From Macrostomum lignano (taxonomy: Eukaryota), in contig NIVC01000936.1 of the NCBI GenBank assembly GCA_002269645.1, forward strand, positions 157,530 to 221,529: DNA of 64,000 bases, in the 5' to 3' direction. The notes below the pieces were generated by a model. The model worked only from the letters and a program-made list of their open reading frames with translations, was not told the origin of the DNA and did not search any database. Below, one piece after another: positions 12,324-64,000 of this stretch. Numbering within the stretch: the stretch's first letter is position 1; every line of letters starts with the position of its first letter. The position numbers were made by a program, and so were the translations under genes.

Positions 12324-13014
12324 AAGATGGCGCTTCTAGTTTAAAGAAGCCTCTTTATTGATTTTAGATATGTCCATGTTGCTGCAACCACATTCATTAC
12401 TTGGAAAATAATGATTCTTGTTTCGAATTGTAATTTCATACGTATTTGACTTTTATATAGTTCTGCCGTTATTGCCCTCCATTGCTACTTGAAGTAGTGC
12501 AAATCTTCTACTATTTAATTTACTAGGTACTGCCGTTAGAAGTTTATAAACCAATAAAAATGCTTATCCTGAATAAAAATAGTCTGTTCATTGCTGCCGA
12601 CATTCTTTTGTCAGTCTGTCTCGGGCTGGGGTTCAAGGCTTTGGATTAAATGGAAGCTGAGATTGTTCGCCTCATCAAAGTATCTCCAAAGTTCTTCGTA
12701 AATAGACTGCCAAGTGAAGTTTGACTGCCAAGCAGAAGAAGAGCAGTGCAATTTAAGCAGTAAATTGTAAAAGATGCTTCAATTTAACAGTGTTGTAAAC
12801 CTGAAAATATGGAACTTCTCGAATTGGGGTAATAAAATATTTGCTAAGAGAACCGGACGTAGATGTGACAGCTGTGGCCCGTGAGGAGATCAGAGTTCAG
12901 GAAATAAAGAGGATAGAGAAACTGGGGGTAGATGAGAACTGGAGAAGGGCAGATATGATAGAAGTGAAATAATAAAAATGAGGGTGAGGGAAATTTGAAA
13001 TGAGAGCTAAAAAG

Positions 13015-13765
13015 GGTAGAGATGAGAGCAGGGGAAGTGTAGAGATGAGAGCAGGAGAAGTGTAGAGATGAGAGCAGGAGAAGTGTAGAGATGAGAGCAG
13101 GGGAAGGGTAGAGATGAGAGCAGGGGAAGGGTAGAGATGAGAGCAGGGGAAGGGTAGAGATGAGAGTCGGGGAAGGGTAGAGATGAGAGTCGGGGAAGGG
13201 TAGAGATGAAAGCCGGGGAAGGGTAGAGATGAGAGTCGGGGAAGGGTAGAGATAGGAGTTGGAAAGGGTAGAGATGAGAGCAGGGAAATGTAAAGATGAG
13301 AGCAGGAAAAGGGTAGGGATGAGAGTCGGGGAAGGGTAGAGATGAGAGTCGGGGAAGGGTAGAGATGAGAGTCGGGGAAGGGTAGAGATGAGAGCAGGGA
13401 AATGTAAAGATGAGAGCAGGGAAATGTAAAGATGAGAGCAGGAAAAGGGTAGGGATGAGAGTCGGGGAAGGGTAGAGATGAGAGTCGGGGAAGGGTAGAG
13501 ATGAGAGTCGGGGAAGGGTAGAGATGAGAGTCGGGGAAGGGTATAGATGAGAGTCGGGGAAGGGTAGGGATGAGAGTTGGGGAAGGGTAGAGATGAGAGT
13601 CAGGGAAGGGTATAGATGAGAGTCGGGGAAGGGTAGAGATGAGAGTCGGGGAAGGGTATAGATGAGAGTCGGGGAAGGGTAGAGATGAGAGTCGGGGAAG
13701 GGTAGAGATGAGAGTCAGGGAAGGGTAGGGATGAAAGCTGGGAAAGGGTAGAGATGAGAGCTGAG
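13015..13765. repeat. 23-bp purine-rich minisatellite (GAGATGAGAGTCGGGGAAGGGTA)n
   Basis: Direct reading. Confidence 0.95.
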
Positions 13766-14000: not shown

Positions 14001-16964
14001 TTAGTCGGAGTAGCAGTGCGGGAACTGCTGTCGGAACTCGTTCATGGCCACGTCACCGAATTTGTACAGCTTCTTGCAGGGCGTGCCCACGCTCTCAAAG
14101 ATGCCGTTGTACTTCTGGCGGCTGCTCCTGCGGCGGGTTTGAGAGAGGAGTGTGACTAGAGAGTTTCATTAGAGAGGTTATGATTAGACAGGGTGATTTA
14201 ACAGGGTGATTAGAGAGGTCTGATTAGACAGGGTGATTAGAGGGGCCTGATTAGACAGGGTAATTGTAGAGGCCTGATTAGACAGGGTGATTAGACAGGG
14301 TGATTAGAGAGGCCTGATTAGACAGGGTGATTAGAGAGGCCTGATTTGACAGGGTGATTAGAGAGATCTGATTAGACAGGGTGATTAAAGAGGTCTGATT
14401 AGACAGGGTGATTAGACAGGTCTGATTAGACAGGGTGATTAGAGAGGCCTGATTAGACAGGGTGATTAGAGAGGCCTGATTAGACAGGGTGATTGTAGAG
14501 GCCTGATTAGACAGGGTGATTAGAGAGGTCTGATTAGACAGGGTGATTAGAGAGGCCTGATTAGACAGGGTGATTAGACAGGGTGATTAGAGAGGCCTGA
14601 TTAGACAGGGTGATTAGAGAGGCCTGATTAGACAGGGTGATTAGAGAGGCCTGATTAGACAGGGTGATTAGAAAGGCCTGATTAGACAGGGTGATTGTAG
14701 AGGCCTGATTAGACAGGGTGATTAGACAGGGTGATTGTAGAGGCCTGATTAGACAGGGTGATTAGACAGGGTGATTAGACAGGGTGATTAGACAGGGTGA
14801 TTAGACAGGGTGATTAGACAGGGTGATTAGACAGGGTGATTAGACAGGGTGATTAGACAGGGTGATTAGACAGGGTGATTAGACAGGGTGATTAGACAGG
14901 GTGATTAGACAGGGTGATTAGACAGGGTGATTAGACAGGGTGATTAGACAGGGTGATTAGACAGGGTGATTAGACAGGGTGATTAGACAGGGTGATTAGA
15001 CAGGGTGATTAGACAGGGTGATTAGACAGGGTGATTAGACAGGGTGATTAGACAGGGTGATTAGACAGGGTGATTAGACAGGGTGATTAGACAGGGTCAT
15101 TAGACAGGGTGATTAGACAGGACTGCTACCAGAAGAATTGCTATAAATAGCAATACATTTTTAAGCTACTATTTATAGATCCAAGGGTTTAAAAGTGCAA
15201 GCCAGGCTGACCTGATGGCTCGGGTCAGCGTACTGAACTCCGCGCTGGTGTTGCTCTTGAACTTGCACCAGATCAGAGCCAGCATCTGGGTATTCAGCAC
15301 CAGGAAATAGTTCGATGGCCGATCTGTCGGCTTCCTGCGCTGGTCGCAAAACACGGCCACCTGGCCAAGGGCCGACTGCTCATCAGGAGATTCAAAAGTT
15401 GGCGCCGAGGAGTTGAGAACGCTGTGCAGAATGACGCCCAGGAATGTGTGAATTCGGCGACCGTGACCTTCTGTTGAATGAGTGAACGGTTGTTGCGAAA
15501 TCTATGGAATTCTATCAAACTAATCTAGAGACCTTTTTGGAACTGATCTAGAGATAATCTAGAAACTAATCTAGATACAATCTAGAAACTGATCTAGAGA
15601 CAATGTAGAAACTAATCTAGAGACAATCTAGAAACTAATCTAGAGACAATCTAGAAACTAATCTAGAGACAATCTAGAAACTAATCTAGAGACAATCTAG
15701 AAACTGATCTAGAGGCAATCTAGAAACTGATCTAGAGACAATCTAGAAACTAATCTAGAGACAATCTAGAAACTAATCTAGGGACAATCTAGAATCTGAT
15801 CTAGAGACAATCTAGAAACTAATCTAGAGACAATCTAGAAACTGATCTAGAGACAATCTAGAAACTGATCTAGAGACAATCTAGAAACTGATCTAGAGAC
15901 AATCTAGAAACTAATCTAGAGACAATCTAGAAACTAATCTAGAGACAATCTAGAAACTGATCTAGAGATAATCTAGAAACTAATCTAGATACAATCTAGA
16001 AACTAATCTAGAGACAATCTAGAAACTAATCTAGAGACAATCTAGAAACTAATCTAGAGACAATCTAGAAACTAATCTAGAGACAATCTAGAAACTGATC
16101 TAGAGATAATCTAGAAACTAATCTAGATACAATCCTTAAACTAATCTAGAGACAATCTAGAAACTAATCTAGAGACAATCTAGAAACTGATCTAGAGGCA
16201 ATCTAGAAACTAATCTAGAGACAATCTAGAAACTATTCTAGAGACAATCTAGAAACTAATCTAGAGACAATCTAGAAACTATTCTAGAGACAATCTAGAA
16301 ACTAATCTAGAGACAATCTAGAAACTATTCTAGAGACAATCTAGAAACTAATCTAGAGACAATCTAGAAACTAATCTAGAGACAATCTAAAGATCAGAGT
16401 GTAAACATCAGCTAGACCTTTACGGTCATTAGAAGAATGTCTAGAGCAGATCTAAAGAGCCCGTAGCATCCAAACTCGCTCACCCATTCTCCGTCGAATG
16501 ATGTCTGCAGCCTTGGCGGCCTTCTCGTGCATCAGCGGGTCCAGTCCTGAGCCGCCGAAGCCGCCGCCGCCGCCCTGCACACTTGAAGAAGCAGCCGTGG
16601 CTGAAACACAGCTTACCGCCTGCGGCGGCACGTAGGGTGGCAACAGTCGCAGCGTTAAAATCTGCGGCGGAGAACGGCTGCGGCTGCGGCTGCGGCTGCG
16701 ACTTCGGCTATGACTTCTGCTGCGGCTTCTGCTGCGGCTTGTCCGCTTCATCGAATAGTCAATCGGCTTCTCATCTGAGTCAGTCGGCGGGGACAGCTGA
16801 TGAAGGCTGCTGGGCGGCTTTGACAGGGCGGGACAGGGCTGCAGCGGCGGAGGCGGCAGCGGCTGCTGCTGTTTGATGCCATCAAGATTTCGCCGGTGCG
16901 TCAGCTGCAGCGACACCTCCTGCGGTCCGCGGTGATCGGTAAACAACGCGGGCAGCTCTTGCAT
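14001..16964 (-). CDS. Three-exon protein (~288 aa) with Pro-rich and RS-repeat N-terminal half, PIDYS motif and a helical C-terminal domain (possibly BEN-like)
   Basis: Exons 16964-16484, 15470-15212, 14127-14001; GT-AG introns with matching phases (1, 2) give a continuous frame ending ...QFPHCYSD*; AATAAA on minus near 13940. The start codon and domain identity are uncertain. Confidence 0.7.
14170..15120. repeat. 13-bp minisatellite (TGATTAGACAGGG)n with 14-bp variant, filling an intron
   Basis: Direct reading; the right half is a homogeneous 13-mer. Confidence 0.96.
15520..16390. repeat. 23-bp minisatellite (TCTAGAGACAATCTAGAAACTAA)n filling an intron
   Basis: Direct reading; two TCTAGA palindromes per unit. 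Confidence 0.96.
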
Positions 16965-17560: not shown

Positions 17561-18000
<440 letters not shown>

Positions 18001-19837
18001 AGAGGGCCATGCTAACTGCTCTGAGGTCTCTGCGGTTGAGCCTGAGGAGGGCTCTACGCAGGAGAGGAGAGGGGCAGAGGACGGCAGCACGGGATTGCCT
18101 ACAATTCCGGGTGTCGTGCCACCTGCAGAGATGCTCGGAGTCAGTCCAGCGGTTAACGCGGGAGTTGATCACCGAGGCGGGATGGGGGCTCCCGGCCCCA
18201 GCAGCACGCCGGCGGAGCCAGCCTTGGCCAGCAGGTCAGCGTGCTCGTTGCCGAGGAAACCAGCGTGGCCCGGGATCCATCTGAGCTCCACCTGGTTGCC
18301 TAGCGCAAGCCCGTCGAGCTGGGTATTGCAGTCCAGGACGGACCTGGGGCTGGCGGTGCTGCGGCAGAGGGCCCGAAGGGCTGCTTGGCTGTCAGAGGGA
18401 AAAATAAATTTCCGACCGCCAAGCTGCCTTCGGCGCAGCTCTGCCGCGCAGGAGCTGATGGCAAGCACCTCGCTCTGAAAAACACTGGAGTTGAGCCCAG
18501 TGTGCTGGGAGTAGCTTCACACCACTTCTCCCTTGAAGAAGACGCAAGCTCTGAAGCCTGAAAGACCATGCCTCATAGAGCCGTCAGTGCAACAGTGGAC
18601 TTCAGAATCGCTCCAGCTGTCACTCGCCTCGTGTCGAGGCTGAATAGTGACCTTATACCTTTGGCTCAGGAGAAGGGTGGCTGGGATCGAGTCCGTGAGG
18701 ATGTTGAGCCCGCCACACTCCTCGAGAGCCTTGAGGCAGAGGTCAGAGTGCGGGATAAGCGACCGCTTCTTAAAGGCCCGCACTTTTTTGAAGGCCACCC
18801 CAGCATCCAGAAGACGCCGGGTGCTCTTCGCCGCCTCTCCTTTAATATAAATATCCAGAGGAGGGGCACAGAGGAAGGCATTCATGCCTTCAAAAGGAGT
18901 AGGGGGTGGAGCGCCCATAGTCATGCGGCAGGCTCTGCCCTGGATTTTGTAGAGGGCGTCGAGGTTGCTCTTGGCGCTCAGGCCGCTGGCCCACTCGAGG
19001 ATGGCGTAACTGATCGAGGGGCGGATGATGGCAGTGTAAATCCACCACAGCTTCCTGGGGGTGAGCCCCCAGGTGGTGCCCACGGCGCGCCTGATCTGGG
19101 CCAGGACAACCAGGGCTTTTTTGGCTTTAGTTTGAATGTGCGGAGTCCAGTTAAGCCTGTGGTCCAGAGTGAGGCCCAGGCAGCGGACCTGCTTCTCCAT
19201 GGAAATATTCTTTCCATAGAGGGTGAGTGGCTTAATGGTCCAGAGCAGTTTGTTGGTAAACATGACTGCTGTGGTTTTCGACTCTGAGAGTCTAATGCCA
19301 CATTGGTTTGCCCAACGCTCCGCTCGTCCCAGAAAGCCCTGCAGAAGGTCTCTGATGGTATCAACCGAGGGGCCCGCGAATATCGCGGTCACATCATCGG
19401 CATAGCCCACCTTGAGAATGGGGTCGTGGAGATCACTGCAAAGCAACTCATCCATGACCATGTTCCAGAGAATGGGGGTGAGAACTCCGCCCTGGGGGCC
19501 CCCTTTCAGGACAGGCACCGAAAGAGAGCTGCCGTTCAGGTGGGCCACAACAGTGCGGTTCCGGATCATGAACATGATCCACCGGACAAGGTGAGGGTGC
19601 GTGGCCCTGGATTCCAGGGCTCTGCAAAAGGCCTCGAAGATGAAGTTGTCGAAGGCCCCCTCAATGTCCAGGAAAAGCGAGAGGGCAAAGCCGATGCCAA
19701 GAACGGCCCTCTCCAGGAAGTCAACAATGACATGGAGGGCACTCTCGGTAGACCTGCCTGCGCGGAAGGCGTGCTGGTTCTGCGAGAGTGGGAAGCGCTT
19801 CAGCTCGACTGAAAGCAGGCGCCAAAGCACCAGTCTC
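18001..19837 (-). pseudogene. ORF2 3' part: reverse transcriptase core, connection and RNase H
   Basis: Track ORFs 18517-20055 and 18169-18468 are in the same frame, separated by a single TGA; a further frameshift near 18175 continues ...LLRLNRRDLRAVSMAL, then (TAGA)n. Confidence 0.9.
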
Positions 19838-20459
19838 ATGCTCTGCAACCGCGGCAGCACTCCTACCTTTAATAATGGCGGATGGACCGAGGTCCTCGAC
19901 GCCACACTCGTTACCCCAAGACTCTTTGACAGAGTTGAGGAGTGGAGAGTCTGGTCTGAGGAGCCCTCCCTGTCTGACCACTGCTTTATCGCCTTTAACA
20001 TCGCGGACACTAAAACCCAGTCTCCGATCACTTGGAGGCGCAATATCCGCAACACTGATTGGGCGGCCTACAAGGCTGCCCTTGATCTGCACCTGCAGGA
20101 ACTCACGGACTTACGTCCGATTGAGACCTGCGAGGATGTGGATCATATGGCTGAGACGCTGACAGGTTGCATTATTGCAGCCTACGTAGCGGCTTGTCCT
20201 GCTCGCGCCTACAAAGGCAAGACCTCGGCGCCGTGGTGGAACCCGGAGCTGGGGAAACTCAGGCGGAAGGCCAAAAGCCTTTATCGCCGTGCCATGAAGA
20301 CTGGAAACCCGGAGGACATGGAGCTTTTCCGGCAAGCCTCCCGCAATTTCAAATCTGAAGTGCGCAAGGCCAAGGAATGTAAGTGGCGCCAATTCTGCAA
20401 TGAATTGGATCAAGACAGACCTACTTCCAGGCTTTTCAAGGCCTTCAGCTTCAGCTTCA
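19838..20459 (+). mobile_element. Inverted ~620-bp segment (APE C-terminus + linker) from a different, related LINE family
   Basis: + strand reads CNRGSTPTFNNGGWTEVLD...SLSDHCFI...RNTDWAAY...APWWNPEL..., about half identical in amino acids to the host's own region at 21600-20980. Confidence 0.88.
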
Positions 20460-22087
20460 GAGAGTGGGAAGCGCTTCAGCTCGACTGAAAGTAGGCGCCA
20501 GAGCACCAGTCTCTCGAGGAGCTTGAGGCAGAAAGAAGTGAGGCTGATAGGCCTGAAGGCCTTCACCGATTGGTAGTCGCTCTTTCCAGGCTTGGGGATA
20601 AAGACCACCCGGGCCTCTCTCCATGCAACTGGTACATAGCCCAGCTCCATACAAGCTCGAAGGAGACGACAGAGCAGGTCCAGGAAGCGGTGGTTTTTCA
20701 CCGCCTCGTGCAAGAACGCTGGGTAGATGCCGTCGGGCCCAGGCGCCTTGAACGGGTTAAAGGACCTTGCCGCTCTAATAATGCGGTCTTTGGTGATCAT
20801 AGACTTTGCTAGGCCTTGCCCTCCCACTGTGTGGTCTGGCGGGCCCTGCTGAGTCGGAGATTTAGGGAAAAAACTGTTGAGCATGAGCTCTAGAGTCTCT
20901 TCCGAACTCTCTGTGACCGAGCCGTCAGGTCTCTTCACAACAGAGAGTTTAGAAAAACGGTCATTAGTGAGTGCCTTAACCACGCGGGCTACGGGGCGAG
21001 AGCCCTCAAGCCCTTCGCAATATTGGCGCCACTTGGCCGTCTTGGCCCTTCTGACTTGGCCCTTAAGCTCGTGGATTGCACGGGTATAGGCCTCTCTATC
21101 AGATGGGTCTTTGGTTTTGAGCGCTCGCCTTTGGAGGGTCCTGGCTCGGCGCCGAAGGGCCCCGAGCTCTGGGTTCCACCAGGGAGCAGATTTCTTGCCT
21201 TTGTAGGCCTTTAGGGGGCAGGCTGCTTCAAAGGCAGTGGTGATCGCCCCGCCCAGGGAGGAGGCGAGATAATCCACCACCTGGCAGTCAGAGAGGTCAC
21301 TGGGGGGGGTCAAGATCCCGAAGGCCGCGGCTCAGCTTCGAGCCAAAGGCGGCCCAATCGGTGTTCCTGACGTTCCGACTCCAAGTGACCTTAGGCTTTT
21401 GCTTGGTCGGCCCAATGCAAAAGCGGATAAAGCGGTGGTCCGAGAGCGAGTCCTCGTCCCACACTCGCCAGCCCGTAACTGCGGAAAGCAGTCCGGGTGA
21501 GGCGATGGTGGTGTCGATGACTTCGGCCCACCGCCCATTATTGAACGTTGGTGCATTGCCCACGTTACAGAAATTGAGGTTTGTGCTGCTGACGTAGGCC
21601 AGCAGCTCCTCGCCTCTGTTGTGTTATTGGTGTTCTTGCTGCCCCAATGCAGGTGGTGTGCGTTCACATCCCCTGCGATGAGCAGCTCGAACCGACGGGA
21701 CGCGGCGTAGTCAATGAGGTTGACTAGTGCCTCGCAGACTACTGGGGCATCGCCTGGGAAATAGGCAGATGCTACCAGCACAGGTTTATTTGGAATGAGG
21801 TTATTGATTTGAACAACACAGATGTCCCCAGTCGAGAGATCAGGTCTCATCCATGCCTCAAAAGCTTTTGCAGCAAAGACCAGAGATCTTGGGCGAGGCT
21901 GAGAGTCCGCCATGCAAAAACAGTGGTAGCCAGATGGCACATTATTTGGCTTACCTTTAGTCATCCAGGGCTCCTGCACGAAGACCAGGCCCGGAAGCTG
22001 TTGCTCTGTCGTGCGCATCAGATTGACTGACGCCGCCACGCAGTGCTGGGTGTTGATCTGCAGATACCAGGTAGCCGCTGGCATCAT
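20460..22087 (-). pseudogene. ORF2 5' part: apurinic endonuclease, linker and RT N-terminus (two frameshifts near 21625 and 21300)
   Basis: Track ORFs 21332-22087, 21297-21563 and 20111-21313 join into APE...APWWN...KAPGPDGI...FRPISLTSFCLKLLERLV. Confidence 0.88.
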
Positions 22088-23597
22088 TGCAGATCGCGTG
22101 TTGCAGTCGCCAGGAGTTCCTCCTCCTCCTCGGCGCTCACCAGCTTCGGGTCGGGGTCGCCGGTGTCCATGGGCTCCTCTTCAGCAAAAGGCCCCCGATT
22201 GGCTGGAAGGCAGTAGGCAGCGTTCGCCGCCCTTCGCCCACCGGCCACGGGGTCCTCCGCTTCAGACTGGCCCAATGCCCTGGAGCAGCCAGCCGCCTGG
22301 GCAGGCGGGTCCGTCTCCAGTCGGCCCTGCCCCGAGGGGTTGGGCCCAGCTGGGACATCCCCACCCTCCCTGGACGAACTGGTGCGCATAGGCGTCCCGG
22401 CGACCTCTCTCCTCAGCTGGGTGATTTTAGCGGTGCGGACCGCCTCAGCTGCGCGCTGGTACAGGCCGCGCCGCTTGGTGCTGCGCGCCGGGCGTCGGTC
22501 GCCTCCGCCCTCAGCAGCGCGTTCGGCTTTACCCGCGCGGCCGTGCTGCCGGGCGGGGCGGTTTGCTTTGGCAGCCTGAGCAGAAGCTCGCGCCTCGGCC
22601 CCGGCTGCCTCGGCATTCCGCCCGCCCTGCTCACTGCCACGGGGAGGGTCGGCCTCGTAGGAGCGGATGCGCAGCTTCCAAAGGCCGACGTTGATGAAGC
22701 TGCCGTGTGGATAGCGCCTCATCCAGGCGTCCGATAGCCCCAGGATGGCTGTGAAGCCAGTACCGTCGGTGCGCTTAAGGGTGTCATGCACCACTAGGCC
22801 CGCGGCGGGAAGCTCTCGGTTGACTGCAAGCAGTCCTCTCCGGAGCTCGTCAGCAGAGGTAACGACGCTCCTGGCCGGAACCCAGATTCGATGCCTCGTG
22901 GTCCGGGGGCGCTCGTCCTCTCTGCAGAAGGCTAGATTGAGGTCCCAGCTCTGCTCGGGCAGCAGCTCAAGGAGCCGCCGACCCGAGTCAGCATCACTGG
23001 GCCAAATGAGAAGGCACGAGTCCCTCGTCGCATTCGAATGAATGTTCAGAGGCGTGCCCTTCAGTTTGCTTCCACAGGAGGCCATCAACGGCACCTCTCA
23101 CCTGCTTCAGCTGGTCGGGAGACAGGCGCGCGTCCTTCCCCAGAATGACAACCACCGGTTGCCTCTTTGCCGCATCAGCGTAGGAGGCCCAGGGGTCGGT
23201 GGAGCCTTCTTCAGGTGGGCTGTCCACCGGCTGCATCGGCCTCCCTATCCTGGGCAGGGGCTTCAGTGGGCTCGAGGCCCTCTTCCGCCACCGCCCCAGA
23301 TTGGGAAGCTTCCGCTGCCGCGGGCCGTTGGCCCCTGGCACCGGTTTGGCTTCCGCCCTCCCTGGCCCGCCTCGCCTTGTTAAGTCGACGGCGGGCAGCT
23401 CCAGAGGTGGTGCTCAGCTGCTTGGCAGCTGGAGTAGCAGGTGTCTTCTCGGAGGCACCGCTCAGAGTTTGCTCCACGGGTCTCGCTGAGGCGTCCCCGA
23501 TGGTAGCAAGTGGTATGGCCGCGGAGTCCACGGCCCCAGCCGAGGCCGGAGGCACTGTGTCATCCACAGCCGGTTGGTTACTTCGGTTAGAAGCCAT
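22084..23597 (-). pseudogene. Retrotransposon ORF1 (gag-like, DUF4780-like), frameshifted
   Basis: Reconstructed from track ORFs 23211-23717, 22994-23341 and 22084-23094; ATG at 23597 (MASNRS...); stop overlaps the ORF2 start as ATGA. Confidence 0.75.
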
Positions 23598-24072: not shown

Positions 24073-25316
<1,244 letters not shown>

Positions 25317-25884
25317 ATCTCTAGTATCTATCAGTTCGATTCCTATCATATTACTTTTAGTAAAGGGCTTGGAAAATTTAACTGCCTTTATTTGTTAGTG
25401 AAGTATTGCAAAATTGCAGTGTTGTTCAGCTCAATGAAATATCGGAAGTCGAAGAAGAAACACAATTTCTGCTTCTAGAAGAAGCACAGCAAGTAAGAGA
25501 GACTCGAGCTTTCTATTTCTCACTGTTTTCCACTTTCCTCACTCGCTGTCTCCGTCTCTCTGTGCCGGTGATTTATGACCCCGGCTGGGCCGTCCCTGAT
25601 TTATCTCCTCCGAGTGCTACAGGGCAGCTGTTTCGAACATGTGTTTCAACCCCCCCCCCCCTGCTGTAAGAAGTGAGTCAGGCCCTGAGCAGATAACGCG
25701 CTTTCATGATGGGATTTGCCAGCCAGCCAGCCAGACCAGCCTCCCTTGGGAGTTTGACTCCCCCTTCACTGCTACAAGACGATAGAGTTTCTGACTGTCT
25801 TGGCGACTTGGAGATTACATTATCAGTTTTTTTAATTCGACTTTTACTTTGTAGGTGAATGATTCGTTTTAGAGTGAGTGAAGC

Positions 25885-42900: not shown

Positions 42901-45177
42901 GCTGATGATGCTGCATGTGGTGATGCTGAGGATGCTGATGATGAAGCTGATAATGGCTGCTGACTGGCGGCGACAACTGAAACAAAGTTCGAACGAATGA
43001 GTTTTTTGAATGTTAATTATCTCATGACAGATCCACGACTGCCGTATGACTGACCCATGACTGACCAATGACCAATGACTGACCCATAAATGACCCATGA
43101 CTGACCCATGACTGACCCTGACCCATGACTGACCCATGACTGACCCTGACCCATGACTGACCCATGACTGACCCTGACCCATGACTGACCCATGACTGAC
43201 CCATGACTGACCCTGACCCATGACTGACCCATGACTGACCCATGACTGACCCAGGACTGATCCAACCTGACCCATGTCAACTTCGCTGCATGAAAACCTT
43301 CAACCGAGCCATGAAAATCCATGATTAAGCCATGACTAGTCATGACTTAAATAGTCAGAAGTCTGGCCCAAACGCAGTTTTCTGTTCGGCTGCCACTAAT
43401 TCTGCTTTGAGAGGCAGACAACTCCAATTTTCTCTCTCAACACACAAGAGCAGCCCGCCGGGCCCCCTTGTCGTACTGAAGAGCTACTCGATGTCAGCTC
43501 CGACCCTCTTGACCACCAGACACGAGACCCGAAGATCCCCTGACCAGTTAAAGTCTGGACTGGCCCTCGTTTGCAATCTCAAATTCGAGGAGCTCCCAGC
43601 TTCGGTTTGGCCCTACTCGAACTCGCGAAAAAATAAATGCTCATATTTATAATCCAGCGGATTATCGCCGGCTCTCAATTTCGACAAGTCAATCGAGTTA
43701 AACAAAGCCCTTAGGCGTGAGAGTTTTTGCCTGTGGGGTCACGCGTCAGACTGTTACACCTCACTGCACTCACACGCACGCTCACACCGGGTGTACAGCG
43801 GTCCTGACTTTCTAATCATCAGGCATGTACACTCTCTCTGTGAATCACAAAGCCCCAAGCCCCAACTCAATGTGTTCGCGGCTAACTTGCGGGCGGTGCC
43901 CAAAGCCAGCCGCCCCCCGCTGCGAACTAAACTAACTTGTCTACCGTCTGTCTATCAGTCTCAGCCGCTGTTACTTTCAAGCCCCATCTTCTCCGTTGTG
44001 AATTTCTGTCTCCATTGCGGCGCCCGCCCAGTCTGGAGCATAGCCGGAGCCGGAGCGACTCTCTTCAAACTTTCTATTTACCGAGGTTCGCTCTGTCAAG
44101 TCTGCGCAGCCATTTAATATTTTCTTTGCTAGTCTACCAAACGCAGGCATCAAAGGGACGCCGCTTAGCCAGTGCGGCTGGGACTCTGGCTTTGTCTCTC
44201 TATGATTTTGAAATTTTTCGGAATATCTGATGACTTTTAGTCGGCGGGTCTGCCGCCAGAGGGTCTGATGCTGCCACGGAGTTAAGAATTTTTGACTCTC
44301 AGCTTCCCACAGTCTGTGTTCTGCGACATCATCGAGCGCGCATCGGTTGTGTCGCGTCAGGAGCGGTTTTTTTCTTGCTAAATCTCGAACTCTGCCGGCT
44401 AAGCATTCCTGGCCAGCTCGCCAGTGGTCACCTATGGCATATAGTCGGTTAATAAGCTTGCAGAGGTGGCTGAAGGTGATTTCAAGGGCTGCCCAGCCCA
44501 GTTGACAAACCTGTAATTATTGATCAACAACCAACTGCAACTGCCATCATGAGCCCCCGTAATCTGAGCCGCGGGGGCCTTCAGGGGGGAAAGTGGGTGA
44601 GCAGTTTATGTTTGTGTGTGTGTGTGGGATGAGAGTGGGCGGGTCCTGACCCTGAAGCTTGTGAAGGGCTGCGCCCCCTCACCCACCGGAGAGGCCCTCC
44701 GCCAGTTGGTGCCCCAGCAGAATCCCATTAATCAAACTGTCAGATACTCGTCACTGAATTCGGCCCGACGATCTTCATCGCTTCGGGTCCGAAACAGAGG
44801 GTGGGGGCGGCTCCAGTCCAGACCGAGAGACAACACATAGGGCAACTGAGTGAATGAATCTGGCCACTTTCCATTTCTCTAACCGCCCCTCCCCCCCTTA
44901 GGTGTGTTTCTTCCGATATCTATATCTGGCCAGTGTAAGCCGGGGGTGTAAACAAGCGCAACAGCTGGCCGCCCCTCTTGAAAGGGGAAGAAAGTGGACA
45001 AGATCTGTTGTTTGGCCCGTCCCCCCGAACCAGCCTGCAGACCCCGATGCCTGGGACAACAACGTCTCGATGGCTTGGTGCGATAAGGACCCGGGGCCCC
45101 CGCCGTCCCCCCCAGCACCAACTAACCCAGCGGGGGGCGGAGTGAAAACGTAAACTCACCATAGTGGGGGGTAGCGG

Positions 45178-45213
<36 letters not shown>

Positions 45214-48200
45214 TGGCGGCGGCGGCAGAGTCTGCAGCTGCTGAGCCGCCTGAAGGTTGTGACTCGACGGCGACAGGCAGGCTTGTTCGGCCGAAGTTGT
45301 CAAGCAGTCGATGCTGCTAGCGGCGCCTGTTGGAGCAGCGGCCGACTGGCTGGACGAGCTCCCGCTGGCGTGGTGCTGGTGCTCATCTCGCTGGCCGCCG
45401 CCGGCGCCCTCCTCAACGACGAGGTCCATGGGCATCTTGCCCTTCAGGCAGGAGATGTAGCGTGAGCAAAAGTTGTCGCAGAGCTCATGCACCTTGAGCA
45501 GGGTTGAGTCATGCGGGTAGGGATGGAGAAGTGTGAAGCGTCGAAAAGTGCCGATTTGTTTGTTAGGAGGCGCACTTTTGGGTGTCAGAAAGCGCCTAGG
45601 TGTAATGTCAGACAGAGCCTAATTTAAATGTCAGACAGAGGCAAATCTAAATGTCAGACAGCCGCCTAATTTTAATGTCAGACAGCGCCTAATTTCAATG
45701 TCAGACAGAGCCAAATTTCAATGTCAGACAGAGGTAAATTTCAATGTCAGACAGCGCCTAATTTCAATGTCAGACAGAGGCAAATTTCAATGTCAGACAG
45801 AGCCAAATTTAAATGTCAGAAAGCCGCCTAATTTAAATGTCAGACAGCCGCCTAATTTCAATGTCAGACAGCGCCTAATTTCAATGTCAGACAGAGCCAA
45901 ATTTAAATGTCAGACAGCCGCCTAGTTTCAATGTCAGACAGAGCCAAATTTAAATGTCAGACAGCCGCCTAATTTTAATGTCAGACAGCGCCTAGAAGTG
46001 CCGCCCAAGTTGCCCTCCAACAAATTTCGCCCAACTGTTTGCGTTTGGGAAAGTCAACCACAAAACGCACGCACCGTCAGTTGCACCACGGTTTCGTAAT
46101 CAAAATCTGTTTACGCTTAGTTGTGCTTGATTTGCATTTTTGCAACCGAATTCTGCTCCCCCCTCCCTCCCTGGCGGACAGGTGGCAGGGAAGGGAAACG
46201 CGAAATCTCCCAGTTTGACAGGTCGTCAAACCGGCGCAGAGTCATTGCCCATTGTCTTATACAATGCTACCCGTCACCCACTATTATAAACACATTATGG
46301 CTATAAGTTGGCAACCAAAATAAGTTGGCACAGCTGATTTCTGGGGCAGGCAAAAGCTGAGCAGATGGTCAGTCAGCCAGTGATCCCGTGTCAAACGAAT
46401 TGTTAGGGACAGCATGCTCCGCTCACGAGGGAGTTGAAAAAAAATTCGTAAGGAATTTATTTAAGTTTAATATGAGAGTCCTTGCATCTAATTTAGCGGT
46501 TAATAAGGCGTGGAGTTTGGGGTCCCAGTGTCCAGACACCGGAACTGCCTGCACTCTAAACTGTGCAGGGCCCAGTTCCCTCACTCGGGTGCTTTTGCAT
46601 CAGAGAGAGGCTTAAGTTTAATCCGCCCTTGAGCCGTTTGAATATGATATCAGATAGCGGCTTCTGTGAAAAGAGCACAGAAGAGAAGACTTCATCCAGC
46701 TTCAAACGGGGAGACTTACCTTTTCAATTTCTAGCAGATGAAATCGAAGCACTTGGACAGCTTGAATCATCTGTAAAATTGTGTAAACATTTCTGGTTGT
46801 ACAAACTTTATTTCTCTTTTTCGTATGGCTAAATCGGGTGCCAAGGGTGTCAGGAGTGTCAGGGATGTCATGGGTGTCAGGGGTGTCAGGGTGTCAGGAG
46901 TGTCAGGGATGTCATGGGTGTCAGGGGCGTCAGGGTGTCAGGAGTGTCAGGGATGTCATGGGTGTCAGGGGTGTCAGGGTGTCAGGAGTGTCAGGGGTGT
47001 CAGGAGTGTCAGGAGTGTCAGGGGTGTCAGGAGTGTCAGGGATGTCATGGGTGTCAGGGGTGTCAGGAGTGTCAGGGATGTCATGGGTGTCAGGGGCGTC
47101 AGGGTGTCAGGAGTGTCAGGGATGTCATGGGTGTCAGGGGCGTCAGGGTGTCAGGAGTGTCAGGGGTGTCAGGAGTGTCAGGAGTGTCAGGGGTGTCAGG
47201 AGTGTCAGGGATGTCATGGGTGTCAGGGGTGTCAGGGTGTCAGGAGTGTCAGGGGTGTCAGGAGTGTCAGGAGTGTCAGGGGTGTCAGGAGTGTCAGGAG
47301 TGTCAGGGTGTCAGGAGTGTCAGGAGTGTCAGGAGTGTCAGGGGTGTCAGGAGTGTCAGGTGTGACATGGGTGTCAGGAGTGTCAGGGTGTCAGGAGTGT
47401 CAGGGGTGTCAGGAGCGTCAGGGGTGTCAGGAGTGTCAGGTGTGACATGGGTGTCAGGAGTGTCAGGAGTGTCAGGAGTGTCAGGAGTGTCAGGAGTGTC
47501 AGGAGTGTCAGGAGTGTCAGGAGTGTCAGGAGTGTCAGGAGTGTCAGGGGTGTCAGGGATGTCAGAATGTGTCAGGCGTGTCAGGATGTGTCAGGGGGTG
47601 TCAGGGATGTCAAGATGAGTCAAGCGTGTCAGGATGTGTCAGGGGGTGTCAGTCATTCGCTCACCACCGCGTCAAGATCCTGGTTGCCGCTATAGATGGA
47701 CTTGTCGGAGTTCTCCAGCTGCAAAGTGTAAAGAATTTCACTATCAATTGGATTCTTAGCATAGGATTTTCCTTTTGATTGACCAAGCGATCTAATTTTT
47801 AAGTTGAAGATTTTTTGGCTCCCAGAGAGAGAGAGTCAGTCAGTCCCGGTGACAGCTTGTTGCCAACCAAGAGTCGGGCACGGGGAAGCACGCGGCTTCC
47901 AAATTGAACTGAGGAATAATAGCGATGAAGAGGGTAGAGAGAGGTGGAGAGAGGAGGCTGCGGGGTCCCCGGCGGCCGGAAAAGCTGAGCAGCGGACTGA
48001 GCAGCGATCAAAGAGCTCCGCTGCTCACAGTTTCTCCAACGGCATTGGCAATTGTCAAGCCGTCGCGCTCTGGAACTGATCCCCCAAAGCATCTCCCCAG
48101 CATCCACCATCAGCTCACTCAGCTTCACGCCGTCTTCCTTCCTAGTCGGGTCCTCATTGATATGCCGTCTTATTCTTCAGACGATATGAAAACGGGAGGC

Positions 48201-59107: not shown

Positions 59108-60090
<983 letters not shown>

Positions 60091-61304
60091 TCAATATGCT
60101 AGAACGCCGCCATCACAACTGCTCAAGAAGCCACTAAAATGTTCAGGAACCGCCGCCACCCAGCAGCAGGAGTCTCACAGCGCAGATTGAATCTTCTTCA
60201 ATCTTTGCTCAGGCAGACGCTCAAGGCCAGAGGGCTCTGCAAAGCTACGCCGCCGAGATGGCAGGGGCTTATCTCTGACAGAAATCGGAGCTTTCCGCGT
60301 TGTCCAAAGGGAGCGGCTCGTCTTTCCTAGCCCCGCCTGCCTGAAAGATCGGTGGCCGTCCTTGAGCTGTCTCACTGTTTCAATCGCATGTCAAACAAGA
60401 TAGTCTACATCATTCTTCCTGGTTATAATTTTACGTAATAAAGTTTTTCCTCGTTATCCTACTGGTTATCAGTAGTATTTTGCGAGTTGTCTTTTAAATT
60501 TGAATCCATGTCGCCTAGAATTCGATGCGTCAAAAGGTTTCTAACACGTTTTTCTTGGAGCGACCTGTCCGCGTACGCTTGTACATGTCTGATGATGAGA
60601 TGTCTGCATTGTACACCCTGTATGAGTGCGTGCCTTCGTACAGTATTGGCGTGCTTGAATGTGCTCAGGACTGCTTGCTTCCTGAAAAACGTAGGTAGGC
60701 CCTTCTATCCACTACATACTCGCAGATACTTCCACACGCGCGAATTTCCCTGTTAAATTATGTTATACTCGTATCAACGAAAAGAATGTTTAGCTACTGA
60801 AAGTAGTTAATAGCGTAATTGTTTGCATTTCTCTAGCAATGGACGCTCTAAAAATTTGCAATTTTTTTATTAATCTAAAATTGTTTTGCATTTTGTACTT
60901 ATTCGTATATTTACTGGAGAACGAAGCTTAGGCAGACAGTAATATAAGGCTGCTCTCGAGAGCGGAGGACGGGTGCTTGGGGTTGGTAAGAAATAATTGC
61001 TGCATTAGCAAGCAAAAAATGAATTAAAAGCAGAACTGACAACCCTTCTCAACACGTCTGGAATTCCTCTATACTACTCTGTCATTATGCAGCTCAACAG
61101 GCAATTGCTGTCGCGAGTGAGCAGGCTCGTGGGCGTGGCACACCTAGCTGCAAGTGTCTCTCTCTGCTCATGGATGAATCAAAGTGAACTCAAAAAAACA
61201 GGAACTTGAAGCGATTTGAGTAGCCGACATCAGCATGTAGAATGAATGTTTCTGTTAATTTAAAATTGCACTAACAAAACTACAACTAACATAATGAATG
61301 CAGT

Positions 61305-63216
61305 TCACTCCATTGGGGTTCTCCAGAGCAGGTACACGGCCTCCTGGTACTTGAATATGAAACAGAAGCCGGGCTCGTGCGATACGAGGTTCCAGTACTG
61401 ACCGCGGACGATCACCACGTGGAACAGTCTGCCAAACTGGTCGTCCAGCAGCTGCCTTCACTTCTGGGCAGCTGCTTCGGCTGCGGCGATTCTTCCAGAC
61501 TCTCCTTGACGATGAAGAACGCTTCTGCCTGCCTGTCGGGCGGCATGTCGTTGTAAATCACCTGCACACTGCTGGGCAGGCTGCGCTCTGGACCGCGAAT
61601 ACGCTCTTGGAGCGGTAAGCCCGCCTGCAGGCAGTTTAGGGATTGCTAATCTAGCCAACACCGATGCTGGATTAGAGTGGATTGCTAATCTAGCCAACAC
61701 CGATGCTGGATAAGAGTGGATTGCTAATCTAGCCAACACCGATGCTGGATAAGAGTGGATTGCTAATCTAGCCAACACCGATGCTGGATAAGAGTGGATT
61801 GCTAATCTAGCCAACACCGATGCTGGATAAGAGTGGATTGCTAATCTAGCCAACACCGATGCTGGATAAGAGTGGATTGCTAATCTAGCCAACACCGATG
61901 CTGGATGAAGTGGATTGCTAATCTAGCCAACACCGATGCTGGATAAGAGTGGATTGCTAATCTAGCCAACACCGATCTGGATAAGAGTGGATTGCTAATC
62001 TAGCCAACACCGATGCTGGATAAGAGTGGATTGCTAATCTAGCCAACACCGATACTGGATTAGAGTGGATTGCTAATCTAGCCAACGCATACTGGATAAG
62101 AGTGGATTGCCTAATCTAGCCAACACCGATACTGGATAAGAGTGGATTGCTAATCTAGCCAACACCGATGCTGGATAAGAGTGGTTGCTAATCTAGCCTA
62201 CATGGACATGAGGAAATAGAATGGATTGCTAATCTAGCCAACATGAATATGGGTGAATAGAATGGATTGCTAATCTAGCCAACATGGATATGGTGATAGA
62301 ATGGATTGCTAATCTAGCCTACATGGATATGGGTGAATAGAATGGATTGCTAATCTAGCCTACATGGATATGGGTGAATAGAATGGATTGCTAATCTAGC
62401 CTACATGGATATGGGTGAATAGATGGATTGCTAATCTAGCCTACATGGATATAGGGGAATAGAATGGATTGCTAATCTAGCCTACATGGATATAGGGGGA
62501 ATAGAATGGATTGCTAATCTAGCCTACATGGATATGAGGGAATAGAATGGATTGCTAATCTAGCCTACATGGATATGAGGGAATAGAATGGATTGCTAAT
62601 CTAGCCTACATGGATATGGGTGAATGAGGATTGCTAATCTAGCCTACATGGATATGGGTGAATAGAATGGATTGCTAATCTAGCCTACATGAATATGGGT
62701 GAATATAGAATGGGCTGCTAATCTAGCCTACATGGATATGATGAATAGAATGGATTGCTAATCTAGCCTACAGGGACATGAGGGAATAGAGTGGATTGCT
62801 AATCTAGCCTACAGGGACATGAGGGAATAGAGTGGATTGCTAATCTAGCCTACATGGATATGAGGGAATAGAATGGATTGCTAATCTAATTCATGCATTA
62901 TGATGCAGCTCTGCCAGACCACGGCTTTAGAGTAATAAATCATCTCGCGCTATTTCCATAGCCGTTATTTGAAATTCAATTTCTTCTCTAACTAGTCGAA
63001 TCACCGAACCTTCAAGACTAAAGGCTCCGAGGAAAGGGAGATGGCGAAGAAATTGATAAAAAATTCCTGCACCAGCGAAGGCAATTTATAAATTCAGTGA
63101 GGAAATTGGGAGAGTCGCCAGGACTCACGCTTTCTTAGTTATCAGCCGAGCACATCGCAGTAGTTCTCCAGAGTGATTCGGCCCAAGTGTTGCTGGTCGA
63201 AGATGGCCAGCCACTT
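61305..63216 (-). CDS. Tegument-allergen-like (TAL) protein: EF-hand + dynein light chain (LC8-like) domain; last two exons, apparent single-base frameshifts; 5' exon(s) not seen
   Basis: Exon 63216-63129 encodes KWLAIFDQQHLGRITLENYCDVLG (EF-hand-like); exon 61624-61305 encodes SLPSSVQVIYNDMPPDRQAEAFFIVKESLEE...LLDDQFGRLFHVVIVRGQYWNLVSHEPGFCFIFKYQEAVYLLWRTPME*; GT-AG intron 63128-61625. Indels may be sequencing errors. Confidence 0.8.
61640..62890. repeat. 39-bp array grading into a ~41-bp variant, core GGATTGCTAATCTAGCC, filling the TAL intron
   Basis: Direct reading. Confidence 0.95.
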
Positions 63217-63309
63217 CTGAAATGGCGGTTTAAATAGGACTGAGCTTGAGAAGTTTAACAGGAACTGAGGACTTGCATTCACAGATTGAGTCAGATGGTT
63301 TCCTGTGTT

Positions 63310-63935
63310 TTTATGATCCATGACCCCTGCTTATCTGACTCTGCCTGTGTTTTATGACCATGACTTCACTGGCTTATCTGACTGCTGTGTGTTTTATGAC
63401 CCATGACCCCCTGGCTTATCTGACTCTGTCTGTGTTTTATGACCATGACACCCTGGCTTATCTGACTCTGCCTGTGTTTTATGACCCATGACCCCCTGGC
63501 TTAACTGACTCTGCCTGTGTTCTATGACCCATGACCCGCTGGCTTATCTGACTCTGCCTGTGTTTTATGACCCATGACCCCCTGGCTTATCTGACTCTGT
63601 CTGTGTTTTATGACCCATGACCCCTGGGCTTATCTGACTCTGCCTGTGTTTTATGACCCATGACCCCTGGCTTATCTGACTCTGTCTGTGTTTATGACCC
63701 ATGACCCCCTGGCTTATCTGACTCTGCCTGTGTTTTTATGACCCATGACCCCTGGCTTATCTGACTCTGCCTGTGTTTTATGACCCACTGGCTTATCTGA
63801 CTCTGCCTGTGTTTTATGACCCATGGCTTATCTGACTCTGGCCTGTGTTTTAATGACCCACTGGCTTATCCGACTCTGCCTGTGTTTTATGACCACTGGC
63901 TTATCTGACTCTGCCTGTGTTTTATGACCCACAGG
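63310..63935. repeat. ~43-bp array (CTGGCTTATCTGACTCTGCCTGTGTTTTATGACCCATGACCCC)n
   Basis: Direct reading. Confidence 0.93.
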
Positions 63936-64000
63936 CTGACTCTCGAATATCTATGTAAATATGAGCAGTTCCAATCAACCATGAATGTTTATTCAGAGTC

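What the first reader, a model, noticed from the sequence alone, without database searches (positions are those of the whole stretch)
61305..63216. TAL (EF-hand + dynein-light-chain) gene, a family described mainly from parasitic flatworms
Seen: an EF-hand-like exon (WLAIFDQQHLGRITLENYCDVLG) spliced to a DLC-like exon ending SHEP...FKY...LLWRTP; the ORF track misses it. Established: this fusion and the SHEP/WRTP motifs typify schistosome/fluke/cestode tegument allergen-like proteins such as Sm22.6. Inference: if the genome is a free-living flatworm, as its style suggests, TALs predate parasitism and the neodermis.
Basis: partly seen in the sequence, partly recalled or inferred. Interest (0 to 1): 0.75.

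Follow-up and report, generated by a model that had tools for sequence, protein, structure and literature searches.

The report
TAL-like calcium-sensor gene in Macrostomum

Summary
[quoted passage not shown] A GT-AG intron of 1504 nt, filled with a 39-41-bp minisatellite, separates them.

The source is Macrostomum lignano, a free-living flatworm. A retrotransposon in the same window is 95-98% identical to an M. lignano protein.

The two exons match residues 46-181 of UniProt A0A1I8GY77 (M. lignano, 181 aa, EF-hand + Dynein_light) with no amino-acid substitution. Three frameshift sites (four indel events) interrupt them. I read these as assembly errors rather than decay. Exon 1 (EF-hand 1) lies beyond the window end.

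Family membership is well supported:
- Pfam scores are above threshold.
- The best solved-structure match is Fasciola FhCaBP4.
- Both introns sit at the same position and phase as in two Schistosoma TAL genes.

M. lignano has at least five further paralogues in GenBank/UniProt, three of them in tandem. The gene lies outside the trematode clade holding Sm22.6, Sm21.7 and FhCaBP4.

It corrects statements still printed in 2015-2025 papers. The sequences are already public and a 2012 table hinted at pan-flatworm homologues, so novelty is modest.

The parts
63129..63216 (-). Exon 2 of the TAL-like gene: codons K46 to the first two bases of A75 (KWLAIFDQQHLGRITLENYCDVLG LITKK A). It encodes EF-hand 2 and the start of the linker helix. 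One base is missing at about 63145/63144 (GG(N)CTG read as GGCTG), which creates an apparent TGA TAA.
   Evidence: The acceptor is cag|AAG at 63217-63219 and the donor is GC|GTGAGT at 63128. After the 1-nt repair the sequence is identical to P0024 residues 46-75. The same repaired reading aligns to FhCaBP4 ...ALGLRTAEM.
61625..63128 (-). Intron 2: 1504 nt, GTGAGT...CTGCAG, phase 2 inside codon A75.
   Evidence: One search gives the coordinates. Position and phase are the same as intron 2 of the Schistosoma Sm22.6-type gene (codon 78, phase 2) and of the Schistosoma 206-aa gene (codon 91, phase 2).
61640..62888 (.). Minisatellite filling most of intron 2: about 31 copies of a 39-41-bp unit in two sub-types (GGATTGCTAATCTAGCCAACACCGATGCTGGATAAGAGT, then ...CCTACATGGATATGGGTGAATAGAAT).
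   Evidence: (TRF: period 39/41, 31 copies, 87-91% matches, 3-5% indels).
61305..61624 (-). Exon 3 (last exon): third base of A75, then R76-E181 and the stop TGA at 61307-61305. It encodes the linker (RAYRSKSVFAVQKRSLPSS) and the dynein-light-chain-like domain, including VRGQYWNLVSHEPGF and LLWRTPME. There are two frameshift sites: 1 nt missing at about 61588/61587 (CAG AAG CGC read as CAGAGCGC), and a 2-nt loss plus 1-nt gain at 61455-61462 (AGA ATG GTG AAG CAG read as AGAAGTGAAGGCAG).
   Evidence: Three in-frame blocks are 100% identical to P0024 except for the residues at the shift points. Pfam Dynein_light scores 38.3 bits on the repaired window product and 53 bits on P0024.
63217..64000 (-). 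3' part of intron 1 (phase 0, just before K46). It contains a 43-bp minisatellite at 63302-63937. Exon 1 (aa 1-45, canonical EF-hand 1) is not in the window.
   Evidence: tblastn of P0024 finds nothing for residues 1-44 in the window. The intron position matches intron 1 of the Schistosoma genes (after codon 48 and after codon 61, phase 0).

Best explanation
The locus is the 3' two-thirds of a real, probably functional Macrostomum lignano gene, already deposited as UniProt A0A1I8GY77 (181 aa). It belongs to the flatworm EF-hand + dynein-light-chain-like family, called TAL in schistosomes and CaBP in liver flukes.

Architecture (shown). The protein has an N-terminal EF-hand pair, a linker helix and a C-terminal LC8-type domain with the family's SHEP loop and WRTP C-terminus. 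Exon 2 in the window encodes EF-hand 2. Its loop DQQHLGRITLEN lacks the usual ligands at positions 3, 5 and 12, so it is probably not a calcium site. Exon 1, outside the window, encodes EF-hand 1 with the canonical loop DTDNSEEITVDE.

Mechanism (inferred from characterised relatives). The protein is a small cytosolic homodimer held together by the DLC-like domain. Calcium binding, here probably at EF-hand 1 only, stiffens or re-orients the EF-hand module against the DLC domain. That would change what the dimer binds, possibly dynein- or cytoskeleton-linked partners.

The frameshifts (inferred). The three frameshift sites in the window are most likely local long-read assembly errors, not mutations.

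Evolution (inferred from shown data). M. lignano is free-living and lacks a neodermal tegument, and it shares intron positions with schistosome genes. The fusion gene therefore already existed, and had probably already duplicated, in the common ancestor of Macrostomorpha and Neodermata. It was later expanded and used in the parasite tegument.
For: Species:
- The RT ORF is 97% identical to M. lignano A0A1I8IXZ7; pieces are 95-98% identical.

Gene identity:
- P0024 was found with profile A1. Its sequence maps to the two exons with no amino-acid substitution in 136 residues.

Family:
- Pfam on P0024 gives Dynein_light 53 bits (cut-off 29.1), EF-hand_7 33.8 (cut-off 30) and EF-hand_1 25.8 at aa 11-36 only.
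- PDB phmmer: FhCaBP4 at 4.6e-14 and the FhCaBP2 DLC domain at 5e-9, against at most 20 bits for canonical LC8.
- The AlphaFold model has pLDDT 90.4. The best Foldseek match is full-length FhCaBP4: 176 columns, E = 1.4e-14.
- SHEP and WRTP are nearly invariant across 44 members.

Shared gene structure:
- A phase-0 intron lies one residue before the conserved Trp, and a phase-2 intron lies 28 residues after it. This holds for the window gene and for two Schistosoma genes.

Paralogues in M. lignano:
- Mlig015343, Mlig010873, Mlig009131 and Mlig005207, plus a tandem cluster on NIVC01000459.1. All of those scanned have both domains.

Errors rather than decay:
- There are four indel events and no amino-acid change, mostly at short homopolymers.
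- Real homeologous loci of M. lignano differ by about four substitutions per gap.
- Minisatellites next to the gene show 3-11% indels, against 0-2% in most other arrays of the window.

Mechanism from relatives:
- FhCaBP4 is a homodimer stabilised by calcium (PMC12347358).
- SmTAL1-3 all dimerise and differ in how many EF-hands work (PMC4300400).
Against: - As printed, the window sequence cannot encode the protein: it has three frameshift sites and an in-frame TGA TAA.
- Other coding stretches of the same window run for more than 1.1 kb without a frameshift (ankyrin ORF 6085-7641, RT ORF 18517-20055). Assembly errors would therefore have to be locally concentrated.
- A0A1I8GY77 has no GenBank (PAA...) counterpart in the collection and no gene record. 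Its model rests on another assembly that I could not inspect.
- No transcript evidence was available.
- Calcium binding, dimerisation and cellular location are all inferred from relatives that are 29-38% identical.
- In FhCaBP4 the main calcium site is EF-hand 2, which is the degenerate one here.
Confidence: 0.8

Rival explanations
1. The window copy is a recently inactivated pseudogene: a duplicate of the A0A1I8GY77 gene, in this partly polyploid genome, that has really acquired the frameshifts.
For: There are three frameshift sites and an apparent TGA TAA in 408 coding nt. Long ORFs elsewhere in the window are unbroken. M. lignano carries near-identical duplicate loci, for example L005 and L006. 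The GenBank annotation seems to lack this gene.
Against: There is no amino-acid substitution in 136 codons alongside four indels. Duplicate loci in this species diverge mainly by substitution, about 4:1. The indels sit at short homopolymers. Splice sites and the stop codon are intact. The neighbouring minisatellites show unusually high indel noise.
Confidence: 0.15
2. The resemblance is a chance or convergent juxtaposition of an EF-hand fragment and an ordinary LC8 dynein light chain gene, not a TAL-family gene.
For: EF-hand 2 alone is weak on Pfam (E = 0.061). LC8 domains are ubiquitous.
Against: A deposited 181-aa model joins the exons. The DLC part scores far better against fluke CaBPs than against LC8. 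SHEP/WRTP are present. Both intron positions and phases are shared with Schistosoma TAL genes. The full-length fold match is to FhCaBP4.
Confidence: 0.02
3. The gene is contamination from, or a horizontal transfer out of, a parasitic flatworm.
For: The family is described in the literature as parasite-only (PMC4300400, PMC12347358).
Against: The gene lies on the same 64-kb stretch as an M. lignano retrotransposon. Its introns are filled with the same kind of minisatellites as the rest of the window. It is only 29-38% identical to any neodermatan member. M. lignano has at least five further divergent paralogues on large contigs.
Confidence: 0.01

Closest known systems
Fasciola hepatica FhCaBP4 (PDB 9voa) and the FhCaBP2 DLC domain (5fwz/5fx0)
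   Same: Both have the two-domain architecture of an EF-hand pair plus a DLC-like domain. Both have the FSHEPF-type beta4-beta5 loop (VSHEPGF here) and a WRTP C-terminus. FhCaBP4 is the best sequence match and the best fold match. It forms a homodimer via the DLC domain (PMC12347358).
   Different: Identity is only about 29%. In FhCaBP4, EF-hand 2 (DADENGKITLEE) is the main calcium site. Here EF-hand 2 (DQQHLGRITLEN) lacks ligands and EF-hand 1 is the canonical one. The loop reads RGQYW instead of TGSYW. The host is free-living and has no tegument.
Schistosoma TAL family (SmTAL1/Sm22.6, SmTAL2/Sm21.7, SmTAL3/Sm20.8 ... SmTAL13)
   Same: Same architecture and size. Both introns of the window gene are at the same position and phase as in the Sm22.6-type gene. 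The number of working EF-hands varies within the family, as it does here (PMC4300400).
   Different: The M. lignano gene falls outside the 200/200-supported trematode clade that holds Sm22.6, Sm21.7, the Sm tegument-associated antigen, FhCaBP4 and OvCaBP. Nothing shows it is tegumental or an IgE target.
Schistosoma 206-aa 'Tegument antigen / Tegumental protein' (e.g. S. japonicum C1LEZ4; cluster of P0097)
   Same: 35% identity. Same two intron positions and phases, with even the same split Ala codon. It groups loosely with the window gene in the NJ trees.
   Different: The grouping has only 43/200 bootstrap support. The schistosome gene has an extra N-terminal exon.
Canonical LC8 / DYNLL dynein light chains
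   Same: The C-terminal 85 residues adopt the LC8 fold (TM 0.85-0.9 normalised to the target, rmsd about 1.5 A) and match Pfam PF01221.
   Different: LC8 is a stand-alone protein of about 89 aa. Sequence scores are at most 20 bits against 55 bits for FhCaBP4. LC8 lacks the EF-hand module and the SHEP/WRTP motifs.
Other M. lignano EF-hand+DLC paralogues (PAA57149/Mlig015343, PAA82680/Mlig010873, PAA82679/Mlig009131, PAA61473/Mlig005207)
   Same: Same species and same architecture. All are annotated only as hypothetical or EF-hand domain-containing proteins.
   Different: They are 27-37% identical to the window gene. They are never monophyletic with it (0/200). Mlig015343 has a single intron at a different place.

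Membership tests
TAL / CaBP family (flatworm EF-hand + DLC-like proteins) | [quoted passage not shown] | tested here: met
   P0024 scores EF-hand_7 33.8 bits (cut-off 30) over aa 12-67, and EF-hand_1 25.8 bits (cut-off 25.4) at aa 11-36. Only EF-hand 2 is inside the window, and it is weak on its own (E = 0.061).
TAL / CaBP family (flatworm EF-hand + DLC-like proteins) | C-terminal dynein-light-chain-like domain (Pfam PF01221) | tested here: met
   38.3 bits on the repaired window product and 53 bits on P0024. The gathering score is 29.1.
TAL / CaBP family (flatworm EF-hand + DLC-like proteins) | Family-specific DLC signature (SHEP loop, WRTP C-terminus); closer to fluke CaBPs than to LC8 | tested here: met
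   S157 H158 E159 P160 and W176 R177 T178 P179 are at least 90% conserved across 44 members and are present here. FhCaBP4 scores 55.6 bits against at most 20.5 bits for LC8 chains.
TAL / CaBP family (flatworm EF-hand + DLC-like proteins) | Full-length fold like a solved family member | tested here: met
   The AF2 model has pLDDT 90.4. The top Foldseek hit is 9voa_A FhCaBP4 over 176 columns, E = 1.4e-14. The global TM-score is only 0.48 because the relative orientation of the two domains differs.
TAL / CaBP family (flatworm EF-hand + DLC-like proteins) | Shared gene structure with neodermatan TAL genes | tested here: met
   A phase-0 intron lies before K46 and a phase-2 intron lies in codon 75. 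These equal codon 48/49 and codon 78 in the Sm22.6-type gene, and codon 61/62 and codon 91 in the 206-aa gene. The alignment between them is gapless over 28 residues.
TAL / CaBP family (flatworm EF-hand + DLC-like proteins) | Reversible calcium binding by at least one EF-hand | tested here: inconclusive
   This was judged from sequence only. The EF-hand 1 loop DTDNSEEITVDE has ligands at positions 1, 3, 5, 9 and 12. The EF-hand 2 loop DQQHLGRITLEN lacks them at positions 3, 5 and 12. SmTAL3 shows that family members can bind no calcium at all (PMC4300400).
TAL / CaBP family (flatworm EF-hand + DLC-like proteins) | Location in the syncytial tegument; IgE/IgG4 antigen in infected hosts | not testable with these tools
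   M. lignano is free-living and has a ciliated cellular epidermis, not a neodermis (established knowledge). The name-giving property cannot apply literally.
Trematode clade holding Sm22.6, Sm21.7, the Sm tegument-associated antigen, FhCaBP4 and OvCaBP | Falls inside that clade | tested here: not met
   The clade is recovered in 200/200 NJ bootstraps without any M. lignano sequence. The window gene is 28-31% identical to its members.
Canonical LC8/DYNLL dynein light chain | Stand-alone protein of about 89 aa with high identity to LC8 | tested here: not met
   The protein is 181 aa with an EF-hand module. It is 19-24% identical to LC8 structures, with phmmer E-values of 0.004-1.4.

The most novel reading that the evidence does not exclude
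The EF-hand/DLC fusion is an old, multi-copy calcium-sensor family. It was already diversified before Macrostomorpha and Neodermata split. Its original job had nothing to do with a tegument or a host; it may have been calcium control of dynein- or cilia-linked transport in a ciliated epidermis. It may even reach beyond named flatworms: about a dozen intronless environmental transcripts of unknown origin (for example L001 at 43% GC, L002 at 28% GC, and a Tara-type marine read set) carry the same architecture. M. lignano, which is transgenic- and RNAi-tractable, would then be the first free-living model in which the still-unknown cellular function of the TAL vaccine and drug candidates could be dissected.
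Probability: 0.3. Interest if true: 0.5.

Novelty: new member of a known kind. Interest (0 to 1): 0.33.

Why it matters
Papers up to 2025 describe this family as found only in parasitic flatworms, or only in trematodes. They use that to argue for parasite-specific drug and vaccine targets and for a tegument-linked role (PMC4300400, PMC12347358, PMC3317908). A free-living macrostomorph carries at least six such genes, and one shares both intron positions with schistosome genes. So the family predates parasitism and the neodermis, and its ancestral function cannot be host interaction.

In practice this offers a tractable free-living model for a family whose cellular function is still unknown. 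It does not weaken the point that the family is absent from the hosts.

The finding is a correction of the literature, not a discovery of new sequence. The proteins have been in UniProt and GenBank for years as 'EF-hand domain-containing' or 'hypothetical' proteins.

Tried and rejected
- Two word-index searches with the 118-aa repaired product timed out.
- An 88-aa DLC query returned 'no candidate'. This was a false negative of the word index, because P0024 shares 42- and 49-aa identical stretches with it. It must not be read as absence.
I used an alignment of returned proteins instead.
- Rfam found nothing in the window.
- The look-up of encoding contigs has no record for P0024, so I could not compare the window with the nucleotide sequence behind the UniProt model.
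- I looked for BLAST tables of S. mansoni against free-living flatworms in the supplements of PMC12058154. Only expression tables are held as text.
- Literature searches for TAL with Macrostomum, planarian or Schmidtea found no paper that discusses free-living TALs. The only hint is Table 3 of PMC3510090.
- I first modelled a short linker with an acceptor inside the DLC exon. I rejected it once P0024 showed the exon starts at 61624 and a third frameshift sits at about 61587.
- I considered a dinoflagellate, lamprey or other repeat-rich source because of the 51% GC and the ankyrin genes. One search ruled this out.
- Deep branching order of the family could not be resolved with NJ: support for window gene + Schistosoma 206-aa gene is 43/200.
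- I could not establish whether planarians have members. None appeared among the 30 representatives whose names I could look up.
Full report
**What is in the sequence**

The feature is on the minus strand. Translating 63216 downward gives KWLAIFDQQHLGRITLENYCDVLG, directly after a good acceptor (ccatttcag|AAG). Then TGA TAA follows in frame.

Translating the region 61624-61305 gives, in two different frames:
- ...SVQVIYNDMPPDRQAEAFFIVKESLEESPQPKQLPR
- ...QLLDDQFGRLFHVVIVRGQYWNLVSHEPGFCFIFKYQEAVYLLWRTPME, followed by the stop at 61307-61305.

The mechanical ORF list therefore shows only fragments of 37, 51 and 59 aa.

With single-base repairs the product passes Pfam Dynein_light (38.3 bits, cut-off 29.1). 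Its best matches among solved structures are:
- Fasciola hepatica FhCaBP4 (E = 4.6e-14, both domains aligned)
- the FhCaBP2 DLC-like domain
- Clonorchis tegumental protein 20.8 kDa

Ordinary LC8 chains score 20 bits or less.

**Whose genome**

The window has 51% GC and carries an unusually high density of minisatellites (55 TRF rows). It also contains:
- a large ankyrin-repeat gene
- a non-LTR retrotransposon
- a Meis/PKNOX exon

The retrotransposon's RT ORF is 97% identical to UniProt A0A1I8IXZ7 of Macrostomum lignano. Other top hits are also M. lignano, and individual pieces are 95-98% identical.

**The gene is already deposited**

I ran a profile search seeded with the repaired product plus the FhCaBP fragments printed by the PDB search (alignment A1). 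It returned 54 proteins. All named ones are trematode 'tegument antigen' or CaBP proteins, except P0024. P0024 is UniProt A0A1I8GY77, M. lignano 'EF-hand domain-containing protein', 181 aa, with EF-hand and Dynein_light domains.

tblastn places P0024 residues 45-181 on the two window exons in four blocks. There are no amino-acid substitutions apart from the residues at the frame-shift points. Nothing in the window matches residues 1-44.

The gene model on the minus strand is:
- Exon 2: 63216-63129, covering K46 to the first two bases of A75.
- Intron 2: 63128-61625, GTGAGT...CAG, 1504 nt, phase 2.
- Exon 3: 61624-61305.
- Exon 1, which carries the start codon and EF-hand 1, lies beyond the window end. 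It is upstream of an intron whose last 784 nt (63217-64000) include a 43-bp minisatellite.
- Intron 2 is almost entirely a 39-41-bp minisatellite (61640-62888).

**The frameshifts**

Relative to P0024 the window has four indel events:
- one base missing at about 63145/63144 (GG(N)CTG read as GGCTG)
- one A missing at about 61588/61587 (CAGAAGCGC read as CAGAGCGC)
- a TG loss plus a G gain within 61455-61462 (AGAATGGTGAAGCAG read as AGAAGTGAAGGCAG)

That is four indel events in 408 coding nt with no amino-acid change.

Genuine duplicate loci of M. lignano differ mostly by substitutions. Loci L005 and L006 in assembly GCA_002269645.1 show about four substitutions per gap opening. A decaying copy with four indels should therefore carry many substitutions.

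The indels sit at short homopolymers. The minisatellites flanking the gene have 3-5% and 9-11% indels, against 0-2% for most other arrays in the window. I conclude, by inference, that this is a locally poor stretch of a long-read assembly.

The counter-argument is that the ankyrin and RT ORFs of the same window run for more than 1.1 kb without a frameshift. I keep a young pseudogene copy as a rival at about 15%.

**Family membership**

- P0024 passes Pfam for Dynein_light (53 bits), EF-hand_7 (33.8 bits) and EF-hand_1 (aa 11-36).
- In a 44-member alignment, S-H-E-P and W-R-T-P are at least 90% conserved, and both are present here.
- An AlphaFold model built on that alignment has pLDDT 90.4. 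It shows four EF-hand helices, a linker helix and the LC8 fold.
- Foldseek ranks full-length FhCaBP4 first (176 columns, E = 1.4e-14), then the FhCaBP2 DLC domain, then LC8 chains.

Gene structure gives an independent test. I fetched two divergent Schistosoma genes and mapped their introns.
- Sm22.6-type gene (L003): a phase-0 intron after codon 48, one residue before the conserved Trp, and a phase-2 intron in codon 78.
- 206-aa 'tegument antigen' gene (L004): a phase-0 intron after codon 61 and a phase-2 intron in codon 91.
- Window gene: a phase-0 intron before K46 and a phase-2 intron in codon 75.

In all three the two introns are separated by the same gapless stretch, 28 residues from the Trp position to the split codon. 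Convergent domain fusion would not reproduce this.

**Distribution**

An exhaustive HMMER search was run with a profile of P0024 and two environmental relatives. It gave 513 representatives at E <= 1e-3 and 167 at E <= 1e-10. I could look up names for 30 of them. Every named taxon is a flatworm:
- Trematodes
- Cestodes (Mesocestoides, Spirometra)
- A monogenean (Cichlidogyrus)
- M. lignano itself, with four further gene families: Mlig015343, Mlig010873, Mlig009131 and Mlig005207

Contig NIVC01000459.1 carries three such genes in tandem plus a partial fourth. About a dozen further representatives are unnamed environmental or transcriptome-like contigs (JGI, Logan, ENA, a marine read set, UniParc). 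Examples are the intronless L001 and L002. No planarian appeared in this small sample.

In bootstrapped NJ trees:
- The trematode clade of Sm22.6, Sm21.7, the Sm tegument-associated antigen, FhCaBP4 and OvCaBP is recovered 200/200 and contains no M. lignano sequence.
- The five M. lignano paralogues are never monophyletic (0/200).
- Deeper nodes are unresolved: window gene + JGI P0078 is 109/200, and window gene + Schistosoma 206-aa gene is 43/200.

The window gene is thus a member of the family in the broad sense, not an orthologue of Sm22.6.

**How it probably works**

Shown: the architecture, the motifs, the fold, and a canonical EF-hand 1 loop (DTDNSEEITVDE). The window-encoded EF-hand 2 loop (DQQHLGRITLEN) lacks ligands at positions 3, 5 and 12.

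Inferred from relatives:
- FhCaBP4 is a homodimer through its DLC-like domain. Calcium stabilises it, and the FSHEPF loop is a flexible ligand-facing element (PMC12347358).
- SmTAL1-3 all dimerise and have two, one or no working EF-hands (PMC4300400).

The M. lignano protein is therefore most likely a dimeric cytosolic calcium sensor or adaptor with one working site. Its partners are unknown. An early report linked SmTAL3 to dynein (cited in PMC3317908).

M. lignano has a ciliated cellular epidermis rather than a syncytial tegument. Any ancestral role must therefore be independent of the tegument and of hosts.

**Novelty**

Papers state that the family is 'found only in parasitic flatworms' (PMC4300400), comes 'from parasitic platyhelminths' (PMC3317908) or is 'found only in trematodes' (PMC12347358). 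I found no paper in the searchable library that discusses free-living members.

However, the M. lignano proteins are already public with automatic domain annotation. Table 3 of a 2012 Echinococcus EST study lists a cluster whose best hit is an S. mansoni 'tegumental protein', with BLAST hits in Schmidtea (62.8 bits) and Macrostomum (50.4 bits) ESTs (PMC3510090).

It is a literature correction resting on deposited data. I score interest at about 0.33.

Noticed in passing
window 3075-11987 (+): A large ankyrin-repeat gene in several GC-rich exons (Ank_2 up to 134 bits). One intron or exon region (3502-6071) is a 20-bp minisatellite of about 129 copies. It produces spurious ORFs of 700-1000 aa in all six frames. 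The 3' exon ends in a 12-bp (PANQ/PTSL) repeat at 11625-11923.
   Followed up: partly
window 18107-23094 (-), with an inverted fragment at 20138-20449 (+): A non-LTR retrotransposon with an endonuclease (21332-22087), RT (18517-20055), an RNase H-like tail and an upstream ORF at 22084-23094 with no Pfam match (a gag-like role is only a guess). It is 95-98% identical to M. lignano A0A1I8IXZ7. The copy is rearranged: a duplicated, inverted piece interrupts it. This element identified the species.
   Followed up: partly
window 44920-45492 (-): The ORF begins with [28 protein letters not shown] and matches the end of the Meis/PKNOX N-terminal domain (PF16493, 30.7 bits). It is probably an exon of a TALE-class homeobox gene, followed by a poly-proline tract.
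   Followed up: no
whole window: The window has an extreme density of minisatellites: 55 TRF rows, with units of 4-54 bp and arrays of 0.2-2.5 kb every few kb. These include long (TCTA)n / (CTAT)n / (ATAG)n arrays at 17562-18001, 24073-25332 and 59110-60091. Indel content differs sharply between arrays (0% to 18%).
   Followed up: partly
L007 (NIVC01000459.1, M. lignano assembly GCA_002269645.1) 1023-2874, 8001-8820, 12924-13750, and 16739-16819 on the opposite strand: A tandem cluster of three complete EF-hand+DLC genes (172, 181 and 188 aa) within 13 kb, plus a partial fourth DLC fragment at the locus edge. The first gene seems to keep the intron before the conserved Trp.
   Followed up: partly
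L005 / L006 (NIVC01000240.1 and NIVC01002524.1) 3001-3604: Paralogue Mlig015343 (P0077) exists as at least two near-identical loci. It has a single 88-nt intron after codon 115, inside the DLC domain. It lacks both introns that the window gene shares with Schistosoma, which points to intron loss and gain within the family.
   Followed up: partly
L001 (JGI 3300030740, 980 bp, 43% GC) and L002 (JGI 3300050598, 1274 bp, 28% GC): Intronless, transcript-like environmental contigs encode full EF-hand+DLC proteins that are 40-43% identical to the window gene. One has a poly-Asn-rich N-terminal extension of 100 aa. The source organisms are unknown and could be free-living flatworms or something else.
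   Followed up: partly
tool behaviour: The word-index protein search reported no candidate for an 88-aa query. Yet that query shares 42- and 49-residue identical stretches with a database protein found later (P0024). A 'no homologue' result from that tool can be a false negative.
   Followed up: yes
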